Shown: piece after piece, positions 1,638-27,163 of the stretch
Numbering within the stretch: the stretch's first letter is position 1
How the letters are laid out: the number at the start of each line of letters is the position of its first letter
NCBI RefSeq assembly: GCF_002571385.2
Contig: NW_019217913.1
Coordinates: forward strand, 308,149-372,148
Direction: 5' to 3'
Origin: Stylophora pistillata
Lineage: Eukaryota
Length of the DNA: 64,000 nt
Made by a program: the position numbers and the translations under genes
The notes under the pieces: model-generated
Told to the model about the DNA's origin: nothing
Databases searched by the model: none
Seen by the model: the letters and a program-made list of their open reading frames with translations, nothing else

Positions 1638-4600
1638 TCAAGCTAGAAGTTCCATGTAATCATCTTCTTCTTGGTTCTCCACTTGAACGGAATGCTGGTC
1701 CGCAGCTGATGTGGAACAAGGGCCAGCTGCGTTCACTTGATGTGATGGAGAGCCTGGTACTGATCTCAGTGTTTCATATAGATTAGTGCCTTTTGTTCCC
1801 GATGAGGTAGGAATTGCCTTAGCATTCGTCGCCAACCTACCATCATCAACAACATCGACATAATCAGCGTTATCTTCGCTTTCATTTCCATTGGGGTCCG
1901 AGCCTTGCTCGACCTGAGAAGGCCGAACCTCATGTGGGAGTCGATCTTGGAGCTGTAAATGTTCGTAGCGATTCACTTTTCCATTGCCATCATCCTTACT
2001 GTGTTCCACTCCTTTCGGTTTAATAGACTGATAACCGACAGCTCGAACTGATTTTCCAATTTCCTTCCTTTCTGCTTGTTGACTGAGCGGCTTTTCGAGT
2101 CCGTGTGCGAAAATGTCTCTGTACTCCTCAGACACCGGATCTATTACACATGACTGCAACCTCTGGTAAACATGCTGCTCCATCCCCCCCTGATTAGCGG
2201 TAGCCTCTTCAGAGATTTCTTTAGTACTTTTCCCTGTACTCGGGTCGGCAGGACTGTTTCCGTTTTTCTGGATTATTAAGTTGTTTTGTGTGATACTAGT
2301 AGACAATTCTGTACAAATTTCGTTGTCTATCCCCAAATTGTCTAACCTTGCTTGCGATCCAGTTCTTCTTGATAAGGTGCTCTGTTTTACGGCCGTCAAA
2401 TGGCGTTTTTTCTTTCGTTTTCGTTTGCAGCACACGTAGTAGATCAAACAGATATTCACAAGGCAGGATAATCCAAGGAAAGATCCCAAGACTATCATGA
2501 TGATCATAGGCAAAACTGTTATGACGCAAATAAAAATTTCATCAGAGGTTAACTTAAACACATTGGATATCTTACCCCACTACCCATCGTCTGTGGGAGA
2601 CGAAGTGACCTGCTGGCTGGTCCTAAGATCGATAGGTCGGGGATCGAACCTTGGTCGAACTATTCTGTCACACTCTGCTCTCACAGAGCTACGCTGCCCC
2701 TCGCAAAGTAAGCAGTACCGCTAATGTTGCAGTGAATCTTGACGAGATGCTTAGAGTTACCTGGAAAGACTCACTTCTCATTGAGGAAAATCAGCAATAA
2801 TTCTAATCAATTCCTGTTTAAAGAAAACCCGCGATAACTCCAGCAGTAACAGTGGCTGGTATGCTCGCAAGACTTGTGAACTTGCCCTCTTAAGGTTTAT
2901 TATAGTAACAGACCTTTCGGTTGGTAAAAGGTTTACTTCCCTTAGAATGTTTAGGTAAAAAAAAAAACAAACAGTATTTTGTAGCATATTACTTTCTTTA
3001 TGAGGGTAGCACACAACTCCGACATCCATGCTGTGGTTACATGACTCGTTTACATCATGCGTTTTCCATACGTCGTGTTCGCATTCGACTAGTGATTTCT
3101 CACTTCCGGTGCACTGCACATCTTTAAGAAATATTGATCCTGTGCCTGCGCTAAAACCAGCCATAGGGACAGCGGCCACTGCAAACGGAAAACCTAACTG
3201 TATGCATGTGACGTTGGCATCATTTCCGGTCCAGTACTTATCGCAAATTGTACCCCAGGTCTTCTCGTCTTTGCTTATCTCCACTCGTCCAGCATAAGAA
3301 AGAACGGGATCTTTCAAACGGATATAGACTATAGCAGAGTAAAGAGCACACAGAGTAATAGCTACAACCTTGGACAAAATAAATGGAAATTGTGACAACG
3401 CGTCCCACTCATTTCAAGTATCATTAAATGGCAACTTTTAGTTCACGCGCTACTTCATTGTTGCTTTAATTTGGTTACGAAGGCGGTTGAAAGGTTCTTT
3501 TTTCTTCTTTAACCCTTCAATTTTCTAACAATTTTCACTGCATTACCGCAGTAGGGTAGGACTAGAACGGAACATATGCGAACCATGAGAGTAGTCCACC
3601 CAATAAATCCCACCCATCCTACCCATCCTACCCCAGGGGAGGACATCCATCACACAGTAATCTCGTGCGTGGGAAATTAACGTCTCCCATCCCTAACCCT
3701 GTAGGAGACGGGATCTCCATTTATTCGTCCCTATCCGGAGAAGACTAGAATATCTAACCATTTCTTGATGTTAGAAAAGTAGCATATTCTTCTCAATTAT
3801 TTCAAGACCTTGAGTGTTGGTCCGGCCGGGGCTTAAACCCTCGTCCAGCGCTCTATCCATTGAACTAACCGGTTAGCGGTTTAACTCCCATGAGTGACCA
3901 AGAGAGAATTTCTCCTTATAATATCAATACAACATCAAGCGGACAAGTGATGAGAACAAAGAAAAATGTCAATCAGGGGATTGTCAGTTGATCCAATACC
4001 AAATTCTCTACACTAACATCGTAAGAATTGTATGGCAGACAGTAAGGAGAAGTACTAATGAGATCACGGTAGTGAAAGGGTTAAATTATACCAGCCGTTA
4101 AATTTTTTTTTTACCTACAAGTAAATTCCTATAACCGCCATAGAGTCATGATCTGAAAGGTTAGATATGCTGACCCCAATCGCTCAGCATTCGCGCACCG
4201 CCCCCCAAATGTGGAAGAATCCCAATGATTTGCAAAGAAACTGGATAAGAATCTAGTTAAATGGGCTGTGATTCCAGAAACCGAAAAACCAAAAAGTGAC
4301 CGTACCATATCCTAATTTGATCAAACTCTTGTAGTTATCAGGTACGGTACGTTAAATGACATATTTATTCTTAGATTTGATATTTCTTTGGCAGAGAAAC
4401 TAATTTTGAAACTTTTGTTCTTAACTGCTTTTGAGCCTTAAAGACGGTACGTGCCGCGAGGATTGTAAACGGAGATGAACCTGGATCCTTTTGAAATTAT
4501 GTTTTCATTACAGTTCTTGCGATTGGATTTCGCAACTACTTTAAGTTAGAAACCATAAAGTACGATTTTGACTTTGAAGAGAGCACTATACCTTTTGTGA

Positions 4601-4685
4601 GTTTATCATCCTTGGTATTGTTACCTTTTCCTCCAACTTCTCCGACGGCACTGACTAAATAAATTGCCAAGATGAAACTGTTCAT
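1638..4685 (-). CDS. Spliced SRCR-domain type I membrane receptor with tyrosine-motif tail (~424 aa). Exons: 4685-4625 (signal peptide; alternative donor to 4592), 3328-2993 (SRCR), 2515-1638 (TM + tail)
   Basis: Exon 1 encodes MNSFILAIYLVSAVGEVGGK and ends at a phase-1 GT. The 336-nt exon between AG and GT sites (phase 1-1) encodes a 6-Cys SRCR domain (IRL..GRVEI..WGTICD..W..C.QLGF..G.G.IFL.DV.C.G.E.SL..C.H..C.H..DVGVVC). A phase-1 acceptor at 2516 leads into TM LPMIIMIVLGSFLGLSCLVNICLIYYVCC, a KRKRKKKR stop-transfer, and a tail with 7 YxxL/I/V motifs. All phases are compatible. Confidence 0.8.
3632..3880 (-). mobile_element. tRNA-derived SINE (partly deleted head)
   Basis: About 250 bp nearly colinear with 63512-63770; minus-strand head with pol III A-box-like TAGTTCAATGG. 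Confidence 0.75.
3880..4084. mobile_element. ~200-bp TTAA-bounded dispersed repeat (piggyBac-like MITE); relatives at ~24510-24720, ~41760-41934 and ~57174-57360
   Basis: Shared ends ...AAAGGGTTAA / TTAACCCTTT... and a shared internal ACCAAATTCTC motif between copies. Confidence 0.6.
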
Positions 4686-25510: not shown

Positions 25511-27163
25511 CTAACCCTTCCTTATATCGTTATCATAGATTGGGCTTTTCTCGATATCTTGTGCAGATATGTCAAACAGGGAAGAGTCTTGTTGAACGTC
25601 ACTGTTGGCATAAATGTGGTTGTCCTCCGTGTTTTCTTCAGCAACGCTTTGGATATTGTCCTGGTTAACATATATTGCCTCTGGATTGGTAGGAACAGGC
25701 TCTTTGTTTTGATCATTATTGTTGTCTTGGATTGTAGCATAAATGTTATCAGTGCTGTCCTGATGACCTTGCCCAATGGTGTTGTGGCCACGAGGATCAT
25801 CTCTTTCGGCATGTTGCTTGTCATCTGCTGTGCTATCATGAATGACAGCCAAATAGCCATTAGAATCTTCCTCGGAAAGTTTTGCATCAGGTTTAGATTT
25901 ACCATTGGGATGACTCTCTTTGCCATTTCCTGGGACTTGCACGGAGGCGATAACGTCAGGAGAGCCTTTCCAGTCTTTCACCTTCTCAGAAGTGACGTAG
26001 TCATAGTTGTCTTCGTTCTTGTCATCCACACATGCACGCCCAACAGTCGATGTCTTGACACTTTCTGGTTGGAGCGGCAGGTTCTGTGTTAGAGTGGCAG
26101 ACAACCTTTTGGCTTCAGAATTTCCATCGTGTTGGACAAGGAGGTACCCAAATCCATCTTCGTCATTGCTCTTTGACATTTCATTAAGTTCGATAGCTTT
26201 ATCATTTTGAGAATTTTGGATTTCAGGAGCAGCTCTGGGTCCAAATGTTGCCAACCTGGGTGGCAACTTCGGGGTCAGAGACATACATTTCGGATCACCG
26301 GCCTTGCTCTGACCTCCGAAGCGCTCGCCAGTTTCCTTCCCCTCTTCTTGTTTTCTTATCTCTTTTGGCTGAGGGTCCATGGGCAAAAGATACTGGGACT
26401 CGTACGTGTCTTCATGAGGAGGAATCCCATTAGCTGCTAATTCTGAAGTCTCGGATGGTTTACCAGAAGCAAAAACTACAAGGTACTCATTGTCGTATTC
26501 ATTTTGAGGCTCTTTGCCACCCAAGACTCCATTTGAAGATTTGAGGTCCAGGCTTAATTCGTGTTCCTTCCCTTGCCCCGAGTCCATTTCTGTCATTTCT
26601 TCACGGAGGTTGGCGTAGGTGTCAGCTTTGGCACCTTTTAAGCTCATGTACATTTTTTTCTTGACGTCCATCCCATTTTTCTCTGGTTTATCAGCTGGAG
26701 AATCTTTTATTGTTGGGCCATCAGCAATTATTTGAATATATGATTCTTCCTCTTTTTCGCTAGCCATTGTTTCGTTTCCTATGTTGATACCGTTAATGGA
26801 TTTCCCGTCTTCTACTACTGTTGTAGAGCAGCCAAATGAAGTTTCTTTCGAGTCTCCATCCTCATTTACAATCCATGGTGTGTAGGCATTAGAAGTGGTA
26901 AGGCTCCTCCAAGGATTACTTCTGTCAGAATCTGAGGTGTCTTTGTTGGAGAACATCAGGGATTGTTCAGTAATCTCAAGTCTGCAGAAATCTTTCCATC
27001 TTCCAGAAACACTGTTTACGCGGGCACGCAATTTATTTAACCAAATATCAACACCGACGATGAGCACCAGCAGCAGCACTAACACACAAAGAAGACCCAC
27101 TGACGCTATAAAAGCTACGTTTTCGTCGATCGGAACCCGAAAAAGAGTAAGGCATGTTGCCAT
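25511..27163 (-). CDS. Type III transmembrane adaptor-like protein with ITAM and multiple YxN motifs (550 aa)
   Basis: 1.65-kb ORF; acceptor TTTTCAG 1 nt before the ATG. TM followed by WLNKLRARVNSVSGRW. Tail has YMSL-x7-YANL, YDNE, YVNQ, YANS, YDND, PKLPPR. Paralogous to the 18979 protein. Confidence 0.85.
   Translation of the reverse strand: MATCLTLFRVPIDENVAFIASVGLLCVLVLLLVLIVGVDIWLNKLRARVNSVSGRWKDFCRLEITEQSLMFSNKDTSDSDRSNPWRSLTTSNAYTPWIVNEDGDSKETSFGCSTTVVEDGKSINGINIGNETMASEKEEESYIQIIADGPTIKDSPADKPEKNGMDVKKKMYMSLKGAKADTYANLREEMTEMDSGQGKEHELSLDLKSSNGVLGGKEPQNEYDNEYLVVFASGKPSETSELAANGIPPHEDTYESQYLLPMDPQPKEIRKQEEGKETGERFGGQSKAGDPKCMSLTPKLPPRLATFGPRAAPEIQNSQNDKAIELNEMSKSNDEDGFGYLLVQHDGNSEAKRLSATLTQNLPLQPESVKTSTVGRACVDDKNEDNYDYVTSEKVKDWKGSPDVIASVQVPGNGKESHPNGKSKPDAKLSEEDSNGYLAVIHDSTADDKQHAERDDPRGHNTIGQGHQDSTDNIYATIQDNNNDQNKEPVPTNPEAIYVNQDNIQSVAEENTEDNHIYANSDVQQDSSLFDISAQDIEKSPIYDNDIRKG

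What the first reader, a model, noticed from the sequence alone, without database searches (positions are those of the whole stretch)
1638..27163. Tandem cluster of six immunoreceptor/adaptor-like membrane genes (LAT/PAG/CD3zeta-like architecture) in an invertebrate, probably a coral
Seen: six same-strand ORFs in 26 kb (1638, 5472, 10974, 17192, 18979, 25511). Each has one N-proximal TM helix, a basic juxtamembrane stretch and a long polar, domain-free tail. Five lack a signal peptide and have only ~3-15 residues before the TM; four of them start MD. In four members the tail tyrosines fall largely in SH2-type contexts (YxN, YxxL/I/V, acidic-I-Y). Known: this is the design of vertebrate transmembrane adaptors (LAT, NTAL, PAG, SIT, TRIM) and ITAM chains (CD3zeta, FcRgamma, DAP12). 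Those proteins are poorly conserved and are usually discussed as vertebrate leukocyte proteins. Inference: this is a locally expanded, rapidly diverging adaptor family forming a phosphotyrosine signalling toolkit (immunity, allorecognition or symbiont recognition). Homology-based annotation would probably label its members uncharacterized.
Basis: partly seen in the sequence, partly recalled or inferred. Interest (0 to 1): 0.92.

Follow-up and report, generated by a model that had tools for sequence, protein, structure and literature searches.

The report
Coral cluster of tyrosine-motif membrane adaptors
In the coral Stylophora pistillata, five expressed genes for single-pass membrane proteins with almost no outside part and long floppy tails, plus one scavenger-receptor gene, sit in a gene cluster conserved across corals. 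Four of the six tails carry conserved tyrosine motifs of the kind vertebrate immune adaptors use, which makes them untested candidates for the docking sites of cnidarian SH2 kinases.

Summary
All six minus-strand ORFs exist in Stylophora pistillata, and each has one N-proximal TM helix.

**Gene structure**
- Spliced RNA contigs show that genes 2, 3, 5 and 6 are stand-alone genes. Each has 5-26 residues before the TM and no signal peptide.
- For gene 4 there is one 59-nt RNA junction plus a conserved ORF.
- Gene 1 is the last exon of an annotated 435-aa receptor built as signal peptide, SRCR domain, TM and tail.

**Tails**
- AlphaFold2 predicts only one helix for genes 3 and 5; the rest has low confidence.
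- No tail has a Pfam domain.
- Tyr motifs are enriched: gene 1 has 7 of 7 as YxxL/I/V, gene 6 has 12 of 16, gene 5 has 9 of 14, and gene 3 has 3 YxN.
- In genes 1 and 5, Tyr is more conserved across orthologues than the other tail residues.
- Genes 2 and 4 have no conserved Tyr.

**Relationships**
- Only genes 5 and 6 are demonstrable paralogues. They belong to a family with 25 divergent clusters at E ≤ 1e-10. The family shares a conserved N-terminal peptide plus TM, clade-specific ITAMs and C-terminal YxN motifs.
- Genes 2 and 3 are weakly similar. Gene 1 is unrelated to the others.
- The order 6-5-4-3-2-1 is fully kept in Pocillopora-like scaffolds.
- dN/dS is 0.27-0.53.

**Verdict**
The LAT/PAG-like reading fits the design, but there is no homology to those families, no demonstrated phosphorylation and no cell-type data.

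The parts
808..2515 (-). Gene 1 (LOC111329238), last exon. It encodes the TM, a CC-KRKRKKKR juxtamembrane stretch and a 263-aa tail with 7 YxxL/I/V. The CDS ends at 1641 and the 3'UTR runs to about 808.
   Evidence: RNA contig joint 2515/2993 and a contig covering 808-2515. NCBI model P0047, 435 aa. Motif statistics. All 7 Tyr are invariant in 6 orthologues.
2993..3329 (-). Gene 1 SRCR-domain exon.
   Evidence: Pfam SRCR E=1e-25. The donor at 2993 is seen in RNA. The acceptor at 3329 is inferred from the NCBI model and an AG in the sequence.
4592..4685 (-). Gene 1 signal-peptide exon (coding part). It lies inside the 3'UTR of gene 2.
   Evidence: N-terminus of NCBI model P0047, and a GT donor at 4591 in the sequence. 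No RNA joint was seen for this intron.
4350..5915 (-). Gene 2 main exon. The CDS is 5475-5861 (129 aa): MDKEVV, TM, then a tail with PLPPRP and no Tyr.
   Evidence: Spliced Logan RNA contigs L005-L008. An in-frame stop lies upstream in the same exon. The orthologue is 73% identical and syntenic. dN/dS is 0.47.
8250..8376 (-). Gene 2 non-coding 5' exon.
   Evidence: blastn of L005-L008 against the window.
9601..11600 (-). Gene 3 (LOC111329189) last exon. The CDS runs to 10977 and encodes a Cys-rich TM, RRIRR, and a tail with IYTEP, YVNQ, IYENQ and IYVNR.
   Evidence: Spliced contigs L001-L004. P0009, 210 aa. Orthologue alignment A3. Single helix 5-50 with the rest at pLDDT<50.
12336..12429 (-). 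Gene 3 exon carrying the start codon (ATG at about 12348, MKVS).
14115..14526 (-). Gene 3 5'UTR exon. A further 30-nt piece maps at 15579-15608.
17195..17600 (-). Gene 4 coding exon. The CDS is 17195-17584 (130 aa): MDVQDL, TM, then a tail with RNPHPPLP and no conserved Tyr.
   Evidence: The acceptor at 17600 is joined to a donor at 18068 in RNA contig L009. An in-frame stop lies upstream of the donor. The 130-aa ORF is kept at 81% and 39% identity in two other coral genomes. dN/dS is 0.27.
18068..21239 (-). Gene 5 main exon. The CDS is 18982-21216 (745 aa), and the ITAM YSNLx7YSEI is at 19177-19221.
   Evidence: The exact protein is in NCBI. Spliced contig L009. Orthologues in A1. Helix 3-50 with the rest at pLDDT<50. 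P(ITAM by chance) = 0.007.
23115..23320 (-). Gene 5 non-coding 5' exon.
24804..27166 (-). Gene 6 main exon. The CDS runs to 25514, the ITAM YMSLx7YANL is at 26606-26650, and the C-terminus carries IYVNQ, IYANS and IYDND.
   Evidence: The exact 550-aa protein is in NCBI. Spliced contigs L010/L011. Paralogy to gene 5 at hhalign 98.5%.
30773..30852 (-). Gene 6 5' exon with an in-frame upstream ATG (about 30799), giving a 559-aa product.
   Evidence: P0041 and L010/L011. The intron holds the N run 27237-27609, which was left as it is.
33407..36469 (+). Neighbouring CARD-caspase gene, head-to-head with gene 6. This is context, not part of the family.
   Evidence: Pfam CARD 2e-12 and Peptidase_C14 3e-50. 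The same head-to-head neighbour sits next to the most distant family member, P0094, in another genome.

Best explanation
This is an old, syntenic coral gene cluster. Five genes encode type III single-pass membrane proteins: 5-26 residues outside, one TM helix, a basic juxtamembrane stretch and an intrinsically disordered cytoplasmic tail. One gene encodes a type I SRCR receptor. Genes 3, 5 and 6, and the SRCR receptor's tail, most likely act as membrane-anchored phosphotyrosine scaffolds. In this reading, Src-family or Syk/Shark-type kinases phosphorylate their conserved acidic-(I/P)-Y-x-N, YxxL/I/V and ITAM motifs. The phosphorylated motifs then recruit SH2 proteins: Grb2-type to pYxN, and tandem-SH2 kinases or phosphatases to the ITAM and YxxL/I/V motifs. 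This is the working principle of vertebrate transmembrane adaptors. Genes 2 and 4 have the same build but no conserved Tyr; they carry conserved PxxP motifs and may be SH3-binding or regulatory relatives. Shown here: gene structures, expression, topology-type features, disorder, motif enrichment, motif conservation, synteny, and the presence of SH2 and SH2-kinase genes in the genome. Inferred: phosphorylation, SH2 binding, plasma-membrane location and any immune role.
For: Spliced RNA contigs cover genes 2, 3, 5 and 6 and the last intron of gene 1. There is no signal peptide and no upstream coding exon beyond 4-9 codons. Acidic residues lie before the TM and basic residues after it. AF2 predicts a single helix plus low-confidence tails, and Pfam finds no domains. 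Motifs are enriched against shuffles. Tail Tyr is more conserved than other tail residues: gene 5 has 8/14 against 113/701 (p=7e-4), gene 1 has 7/7 against 74/254 (p=2e-4), and genes 5+6 together give p=5e-5. The gene 5 ITAM is kept in P0022 and P0044, and with Val at the first +3 position in P0045, P0070 and P0071 (loose consensus) and in P0046 and P0074. The gene-6-type ITAM is kept in 5 divergent members. The IY(S/A)N(I/V)D Tyr is invariant in all 21 aligned family members, and C-terminal (P/I)YxN motifs recur. EPIYxN is invariant in gene 3 orthologues. dN/dS is 0.27-0.53, meaning constrained but fast. Synteny 6-5-4-3-2-1 is kept in TARA coral scaffolds, and 6-5(-4) in more distant genomes. 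At least 50 SH2 exons and at least 5 SH2-tyrosine-kinase loci are in this genome. Syk/Shark and SHP homologues are reported in cnidarians (PMC9546547; bioRxiv 10.1101/046789). The nearest named clusters by protein-language-model features are SCIMP, LIME1, GAPT, PAG and the Src substrate vaccinia A36R; these are leads only, scoring 0.82-0.90.
Against: There are no data on phosphorylation, binding, localisation or cell type. YxxL/I/V is also the AP-2 sorting consensus. Genes 2 and 4 lack Tyr motifs. For gene 3, Tyr conservation is not above background (4/7 against 73/167, p=0.37). There is no juxtamembrane CxxC in genes 5 and 6. There is no homology to any vertebrate adaptor family. The Atlas similarity mostly restates the shared architecture and lies in the range that shuffled sequences can reach.
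Confidence: 0.58

Rival explanations
1. The tyrosine motifs are mainly sorting signals (YxxPhi bound by AP-2/AP-1 mu subunits). The proteins would then be trafficking cargo or regulators, for example of endocytosis or phagosome and symbiosome traffic, not SH2 docking scaffolds.
For: All 7 Tyr of gene 1 and 8 each of genes 5 and 6 fit YxxL/I/V, which is also the AP-2 consensus (established knowledge). SRCR scavenger receptors are typically endocytic.
Against: Asn at +2 is conserved in many motifs: (P/I)YxN is repeated 3-5 times per protein across 21 family members. Asn at +2 is not part of the sorting consensus but defines Grb2-type SH2 sites. ITAM spacing is conserved within clades. The motifs sit hundreds of residues from the membrane in acidic contexts with I/V/P at -1. 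One sorting signal would suffice, yet seven are invariant.
Confidence: 0.13
2. This is not a functional unit or a family. It is a chance neighbourhood of unrelated small membrane-protein genes, some being phosphotyrosine scaffolds used in non-immune contexts (adhesion, growth-factor or neuronal signalling), with no link to immunity, allorecognition or symbiosis.
For: Homology is shown only for genes 5/6, is weak for 2/3 and 3/4, and is absent for gene 1. Genes 2 and 4 have no conserved Tyr. No cell-type data could be obtained.
Against: Order and orientation of all six genes are kept between two coral genera. The 6-5-4 trio is kept in more distant genomes. All have the same unusual gene build, with the whole CDS in the last exon behind non-coding 5' exons. 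Genes 2 and 3 are colinearly similar from the TM through the tail (z=7). The CARD-caspase neighbour is conserved. None of this proves co-function.
Confidence: 0.2
3. Some members, above all genes 2 and 4, are not functional proteins but conserved uORF-like or 3'UTR-embedded ORFs of read-through transcripts.
For: Gene 4's coding exon is reached by a splice from the end of gene 5's transcript in the only RNA contig that shows it. Its exact protein is not in the protein collection and has no NCBI model. Gene 1's first exon lies in gene 2's 3'UTR.
Against: The gene 4 ORF keeps its exact 130-aa length at 81% and 39% identity with dN/dS 0.27, the lowest of the cluster. Gene 2's exact protein occurs on 41 contigs; the contigs fetched are spliced RNA, and its dN/dS is 0.47.
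Confidence: 0.07

Closest known systems
Vertebrate transmembrane adaptor proteins (LAT, NTAL/LAT2, PAG/Cbp, LIME, SCIMP, GAPT, SIT, TRIM)
   Same: Very short ectodomain without a signal peptide, one TM, a basic juxtamembrane stretch, a long disordered tail, and several Tyr in SH2-type contexts including repeated YxN as in LAT. They are the nearest named clusters by language-model features (lead only).
   Different: No detectable sequence homology (no Pfam LAT, PAG, LIME1, SCIMP or GAPT hit at E<=1). No CxxC palmitoylation motif next to the TM in genes 5 and 6. Genes 5 and 6 carry a conserved N-terminal acidic peptide ((D/N)EDF(V/I)FK) and ITAMs, which LAT-type adaptors lack. They are much longer (550-745 aa). 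They occur in Cnidaria. Phosphorylation is untested.
ITAM signalling chains (CD3zeta, FcRgamma, DAP12) and Drosophila Draper
   Same: Canonical ITAM with acidic residues upstream and 7-residue spacing, conserved within each clade. Syk/Shark-type readers exist in cnidarians (PMC9546547).
   Different: No conserved acidic TM residue for receptor pairing and no ectodomain Cys for disulfide dimers. Far larger, with many non-ITAM motifs. Draper has a large EGF ectodomain.
Hydractinia Alr allorecognition proteins (cnidarian receptors with ITAM/ITIM tails)
   Same: Cnidarian single-pass proteins, clustered in the genome, with ITAM or ITIM-like motifs in their tails (PMC9546547).
   Different: Alr proteins have Ig-like ectodomains and are highly polymorphic receptors. 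Genes 2-6 here have no ectodomain, and gene 1 has one SRCR domain. No homology was tested or seen.
Vaccinia A36R (OPG164)
   Same: Top hit by language-model features (0.90 and 0.85). It is a short-ectodomain, single-TM protein whose tail Tyr are Src substrates that recruit Nck and Grb2 (established knowledge).
   Different: It is viral, with no homology. The score is in the range reached by 4-10% of shuffled sequences.
SRCR-superfamily receptors with signalling tails (CD5/CD6-type design), for gene 1
   Same: Signal peptide, SRCR domain, TM and a Tyr-rich tail.
   Different: A single SRCR domain. The tail is unrelated in sequence. All seven Tyr are YxxL/I/V.

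Membership tests
Vertebrate transmembrane adaptor proteins (TRAPs: LAT/NTAL/PAG/LIME/SCIMP/GAPT) | Short ectodomain with no ligand-binding domain and no cleaved signal peptide | tested here: met
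   Genes 2-6 have 5-26 residues before the TM. Transcripts add at most 4-9 codons upstream. Gene 1 does not meet this: it has a signal peptide plus an SRCR domain.
Vertebrate transmembrane adaptor proteins (TRAPs) | Single TM helix followed by a long unstructured cytoplasmic tail | tested here: met
   Hydropathy. AF2 gives a single helix and pLDDT<50 elsewhere for genes 3 and 5. No Pfam domains.
Vertebrate transmembrane adaptor proteins (TRAPs) | Juxtamembrane Cys (CxxC) for palmitoylation and raft targeting (LAT, NTAL, PAG, LIME) | tested here: inconclusive
   Gene 1 has CC directly before KRKRKKKR. Gene 3 has seven Cys in or at the TM. Genes 5 and 6 have only an intramembrane Cys and a conserved Cys about 19 residues after the TM. 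Palmitoylation itself is not testable here.
Vertebrate transmembrane adaptor proteins (TRAPs) | Several tail Tyr in SH2-binding contexts, conserved | tested here: met
   Genes 3, 5 and 6 (and the gene 1 tail): enrichment and conservation. Not met for genes 2 and 4.
Vertebrate transmembrane adaptor proteins (TRAPs) | Sequence homology to a TRAP family (Pfam LAT, PAG, LIME1, SCIMP, GAPT and others) | tested here: not met
   No such Pfam hit at E<=1 for any of the six. Only feature-space proximity of 0.81-0.89, which is not homology.
Vertebrate transmembrane adaptor proteins (TRAPs) | Inducible Tyr phosphorylation by Src/Syk kinases and recruitment of SH2 proteins | not testable with these tools
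   This needs biochemistry. Only the presence of SH2 and SH2-kinase genes in the genome was shown.
ITAM signalling chains (CD3zeta/FcRgamma/DAP12) | ITAM: Yxx(L/I)-x6-8-Yxx(L/I) | tested here: met
   Gene 5 has YSNL-x7-YSEI and gene 6 has YMSL-x7-YANL. Chance in shuffled tails is 0.007 and 0.014. Each is conserved within its clade.
ITAM signalling chains (CD3zeta/FcRgamma/DAP12) | Acidic residue in the TM for pairing with a receptor, and ectodomain Cys for disulfide-linked dimers | tested here: not met
   No conserved charged TM residue. The Asp near the TM end of S. pistillata gene 6 is not conserved. There is no Cys before the TM.
SRCR superfamily receptor (gene 1 only) | SRCR domain in an extracellular position of a type I membrane protein | tested here: met
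   Pfam SRCR 1e-25. NCBI 435-aa model with signal peptide, SRCR domain and TM. The SRCR-to-TM exon joint is seen in RNA.

The most novel reading that the evidence does not exclude
The gene 5/6 family is an ancient, coral-wide (possibly anthozoan-wide) family of ectodomain-less ITAM + YxN adaptors. It arose independently of vertebrate TRAPs and ITAM chains and would be the missing membrane docking platform for cnidarian Syk/Shark, SHP and Grb2. It would work together with the neighbouring small adaptors and the SRCR receptor, and perhaps the conserved CARD-caspase neighbour, as an ancestral immunoreceptor-type signalling cassette.
Probability: 0.25. Interest if true: 0.85.

Novelty: new variant of a known kind. 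Interest (0 to 1): 0.62.

Why it matters
Cnidarians have Syk/Shark kinases, SHP phosphatases and many SH2 proteins. The vertebrate ITAM adaptors and LAT-type scaffolds, however, are reported as not conserved outside vertebrates (bioRxiv 10.1101/046789). The only cnidarian ITAM carriers found in the literature searched here are the Hydractinia Alr receptors (PMC9546547).

This family is conserved, expressed and lacks an ectodomain, and it carries ITAM and Grb2-type motifs. That gives concrete, testable candidates for how phosphotyrosine signals are assembled at coral membranes, whether in immunity, allorecognition or symbiont handling. It would also be a case of convergent invention of the transmembrane-adaptor design. 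The proteins have no Pfam domain and the two NCBI records seen are named 'uncharacterized', so homology-based annotation does not flag them.

Tried and rejected
- **Cell-type expression.** The supplements of the S. pistillata cell atlas (PMC8162421) held here contain no gene tables with these ids. Its main text does not mention SRCR, Syk, ITAM or SH2. No paper in the library mentions LOC111329189, LOC111329238 or the XP ids.
- **'One family of six'.** Rejected. hhalign of gene 3 against the gene 1 tail finds nothing. Gene 3 against gene 5 matches only the N-terminus and TM at 75% probability. Tail-only shuffle tests are significant only for 5/6, and for gene 3 against the Pocillopora-like gene 2.
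- **More members elsewhere.** None turned up. Six-frame searches of the whole genome find only gene 6 as a paralogue of gene 5 and no paralogue of gene 3. No similar ORFs lie in the 40 kb downstream of the window.
- **Gene 4 transcripts in the Pocillopora-like species.** The Logan contigs fetched are colinear with genomic DNA and therefore uninformative.
- **Gene 1's first intron.** No RNA joint was seen for the signal-peptide exon to the SRCR exon. Low-depth contigs run unspliced past the acceptor. That exon therefore rests on the NCBI model and the splice-site sequence alone.
- **The high-depth element at 3400-4200.** No tRNA and no Rfam family.
- **Taxon names of family members.** The cluster look-up returned no organism names, so 'Pocillopora-like' rests on TARA Pacific coral sample names and about 70-80% identity.
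- **Steps not run.**
  - I did not build or search a joined spliced model of gene 1. I used the database model P0047 returned by an exon-wise search.
  - Complex prediction was not used, because phosphotyrosine-dependent binding cannot be modelled there.
  - The N runs (27237-27609, 38341-38345) were left untouched.

Full report
**1. Organism and observation**

The window is G000:C130:308149-372148 of Stylophora pistillata. The 745-aa and 550-aa ORFs are letter-for-letter NCBI proteins on a 653,794-bp scaffold. ORF 3 corresponds to XP_022789538 (LOC111329189).

All six ORFs lie on the minus strand at the stated places. Each has one strong hydrophobic segment near its N-terminus followed by a basic stretch. 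None has a Pfam domain in its tail. Besides a 56-bp tandem repeat at 15936-16457 and overlapping frames, they are the only long ORFs in the first 30 kb.

**2. Gene structures**

RNA-derived Logan contigs that are spliced relative to the window define the genes.

- **Gene 2.** A non-coding exon at 8376-8250 is joined to 5915-4350. The CDS is 5861-5475 (129 aa), and an in-frame stop lies upstream in the same exon.
- **Gene 3.** Exons are 14526-14115, 12429-12336 (which holds the ATG, MKVS) and 11600-9601. The protein is 210 aa (P0009).
- **Gene 5.** The non-coding exon 23320-23115 is joined to 21239-18068. The CDS is 745 aa.
- **Gene 6.** Exon 30852-30773 carries an in-frame upstream ATG and is joined to 27166-24804. 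The product is 559 aa, against 550 aa in the NCBI model.
- **Gene 4.**
  - Its exon starts at an acceptor at 17600. In contig L009 this is joined to a GT donor at 18068, at the end of the gene 5 transcript.
  - The frame has a stop just upstream of that donor, so the protein starts at MDVQDL (17584) and is 130 aa long.
  - It has no NCBI model, and only 59 nt of RNA evidence exists. Its ORF is nevertheless conserved (see section 5).
- **Gene 1.**
  - This one is different. An RNA contig joins 2993 to 2515 (CT..AC on the plus strand, which is GT..AG on the minus strand).
  - The upstream exon encodes an SRCR domain (Pfam 1e-25). NCBI model P0047 (LOC111329238, 435 aa) adds a signal-peptide exon at about 4685-4592.
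  - That first exon lies inside gene 2's 3'UTR, and no RNA joint was seen for it here.

I did not build or search a joined model myself. The exon was searched by reference and the database model was used.

In summary, five genes encode ectodomain-less type III membrane proteins. One encodes a type I SRCR receptor.

**3. Tails**

AlphaFold2 was run with alignments of 6 and 21 sequences. It gives a single confident helix (residues 5-50 in gene 3, 3-50 in gene 5) and pLDDT<50 everywhere else.

Motif counts against 20,000 shuffles of each tail:

| Gene | Tail Tyr in motif | Expected | p |
|---|---|---|---|
| 1 | 7/7 in YxxL/I/V | 1.2 | <5e-5 |
| 5 | 9/14 in YxxL/I/V or YxN | 3.2 | 0.0015 |
| 6 | 12/16 in YxxL/I/V or YxN | 3.4 | <5e-5 |
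| 3 | 3 YxN | 0.7 | 0.02 |
| 2 | no tail Tyr | – | – |
| 4 | one tail Tyr, which is His in the orthologue | – | – |

Strict ITAMs occur in gene 5 (YSNL-x7-YSEI) and gene 6 (YMSL-x7-YANL). The chance of one in a shuffled tail is 0.007 and 0.014.

Conservation is therefore the more independent test.

**4. Conservation**

- **Gene 5.** Orthologues at 69%, 48% and 33% identity keep 8 of 14 tail Tyr invariant, against 113 of 701 other residues (p=7e-4). The invariant sites include both ITAM Tyr, PFYVNL and the C-terminal IYxN.
- **Gene 1.** Six orthologous tails, down to 42% identity, keep all 7 Tyr and their +3 hydrophobic residue (p=2e-4).
- **Gene 3.** Orthologues (54-84% identity) keep IY(T/A)EP, RYTVEP, TYLxRPGE and EPIYxN. 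Two other (P/E)IYxN sites are gained and lost between lineages. Tyr conservation is not above background here (p=0.37). All orthologues start 5-13 residues before the TM.
- **dN/dS.** Against the Pocillopora-like orthologues the ratio is 0.27-0.53, which indicates constrained but fast-evolving sequence.

**5. Family relations and synteny**

Only genes 5 and 6 are clearly homologous (blastp 8.5e-10; hhalign 98.5%; tail-only z=14). They are the only two copies in the genome.

A profile of the pair finds 29 representative clusters at the 50% identity level, 25 of them with E<=1e-10. The aligned members share the following features:

- a conserved N-terminal peptide, (D/N)EDF(V/I)FK, running into a conserved TM, then WLRKIxxRVD
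- an invariant FAY motif
- EDESEYLxP, NYDYIT and EYLxV(I/V)H islands in many members
- an invariant E(E/Q)IY(S/A)N(I/V)D
- two to four further (P/I)YxN motifs at the C-terminus

The gene-5-type ITAM is kept within the gene 5 clade. A different ITAM, Y(K/Q/M)S(L/I)K-x-YA(K/N/M)L, is kept in five divergent gene-6-type members. The two ITAMs are therefore old and sit at non-homologous positions.

Genes 2 and 3 show a colinear weak similarity from the TM through the tail. The score is z=7 with the Pocillopora-like gene 2 but only z=0.7 with the S. pistillata gene 2. In that alignment, two gene 3 Tyr positions are Phe, Ile or Val in gene 2. Genes 3 and 4 give 28-32 bits. Gene 1 is unrelated to the rest.

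Synteny findings:

- TARA Pacific coral scaffolds carry 6-5-4-3-2-SRCR/1 in the same order and orientation.
- A more distant coral contig carries 6-5.
- Another genome carries a 6-like, a 5-like and a 4-like gene in order, with the gene 4 ORF again 130 aa at 39% identity.
- The most distant family member, P0094, sits head-to-head with a CARD-caspase, as gene 6 does in the window.

The cluster is therefore ancient and syntenic. It is not a recent local expansion.

**6. Mechanism**

The build is a tiny ectodomain, one TM, a basic stop-transfer stretch and a long disordered tail. The tail carries conserved acidic-(I/P)-Y-x-N, YxxL/I/V and ITAM islands. This is how vertebrate transmembrane adaptors work: kinases phosphorylate the Tyr and SH2 proteins dock on them.

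Readers and writers are present in this genome, with at least 50 SH2 exons and at least 5 SH2-tyrosine-kinase loci. Cnidarian Syk, Shark and SHP homologues are published (PMC9546547). DAP12 and FcRgamma are reported as not conserved (bioRxiv 10.1101/046789).

I put about 0.58 on this reading for genes 3, 5 and 6 and the gene 1 tail. Genes 2 and 4 lack Tyr but keep PxxP motifs (PLPPRP and RxPHxPLP). They may be SH3-binding or regulatory relatives; this is inference only.

Phosphorylation, binding, localisation and cell type are all untested. So is any role in immunity, allorecognition or symbiosis.

**7. Comparison with known families**

In working principle the closest are LAT, NTAL, PAG, LIME, SCIMP and GAPT. 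By language-model features the nearest named clusters are SCIMP, LIME1, GAPT, PAG and the Src substrate vaccinia A36R, at 0.81-0.90. Those scores are in a range that shuffled sequences can reach, and they largely restate the architecture, so they are leads only.

Membership fails. There is no Pfam hit to any such family. Genes 5 and 6 have no CxxC motif next to the TM. For the ITAM-chain class, there is no TM acidic residue and no ectodomain Cys.

Hydractinia Alr proteins are the known cnidarian ITAM carriers, but they are Ig-type receptors (PMC9546547). No paper in the library names the two loci searched.

**8. Verdict**

- The adaptor-like design and the conserved motif islands are real for three or four members.
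- 'Six adaptors of one expanding family' is wrong in three ways. One member is an SRCR receptor, two members have no Tyr motifs, and common descent is shown only for one pair.

The novelty level is a new variant of a known kind: an analogous family, not detectably homologous, in a different phylum.

I tested each of those notes here.

Noticed in passing
window 3400-4200: In polyA RNA-seq contigs of four runs the summed word depth here is about 10^4-10^5, against about 10 for the flanking gene 1 exons. There are thousands of partial contigs and loose ends. This looks like a dispersed repeat, with a tRNA-like box sequence near 3790-3860, sitting in gene 1's first intron. ARAGORN and Rfam find nothing.
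   Followed up: partly
window 15936-16457: A tandem repeat with a 56-bp unit, 9.4 copies and 94% matches, purine-rich on the plus strand. It gives spurious Ser/Leu-rich ORFs in three minus-strand frames between gene 4 and the 5' exons of gene 3.
   Followed up: partly
window 33407-36469 (+); L027:135-5193: A CARD + caspase (Peptidase_C14) gene lies head-to-head with gene 6. The same head-to-head CARD-caspase neighbour sits next to the most distant family member (P0094) in another genome, so this microsynteny is old.
   Followed up: partly
window 4592-4685 and 18068-18100: Transcription units overlap. Gene 1's signal-peptide exon lies inside gene 2's 3'UTR. The donor that feeds gene 4's coding exon lies at the end of gene 5's transcript, and one RNA contig runs from gene 5's 5' exon through into gene 4. 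Read-through or nested promoters are possible.
   Followed up: partly
window 39711-40061 (-), 46912-47232 (+): A THAP-domain ORF (Pfam 3e-9) and an RER1 exon (Pfam 8e-13) lie further along the window.
   Followed up: no
L016:6441-7571 and L018:58-1476 (G000:C130, 20-40 kb below the window): Two long plus-strand ORFs with several hydrophobic segments (multi-pass membrane proteins, GPCR-like by appearance) lie downstream of the cluster. They were not analysed.
   Followed up: no
L021:5623-5703: In one distant coral contig the called gene 5 orthologue has a 27-residue hydrophobic N-terminal extension that looks like a signal peptide. It is absent from all other family members and is probably an upstream-ORF artefact of gene calling on genomic DNA.
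   Followed up: no
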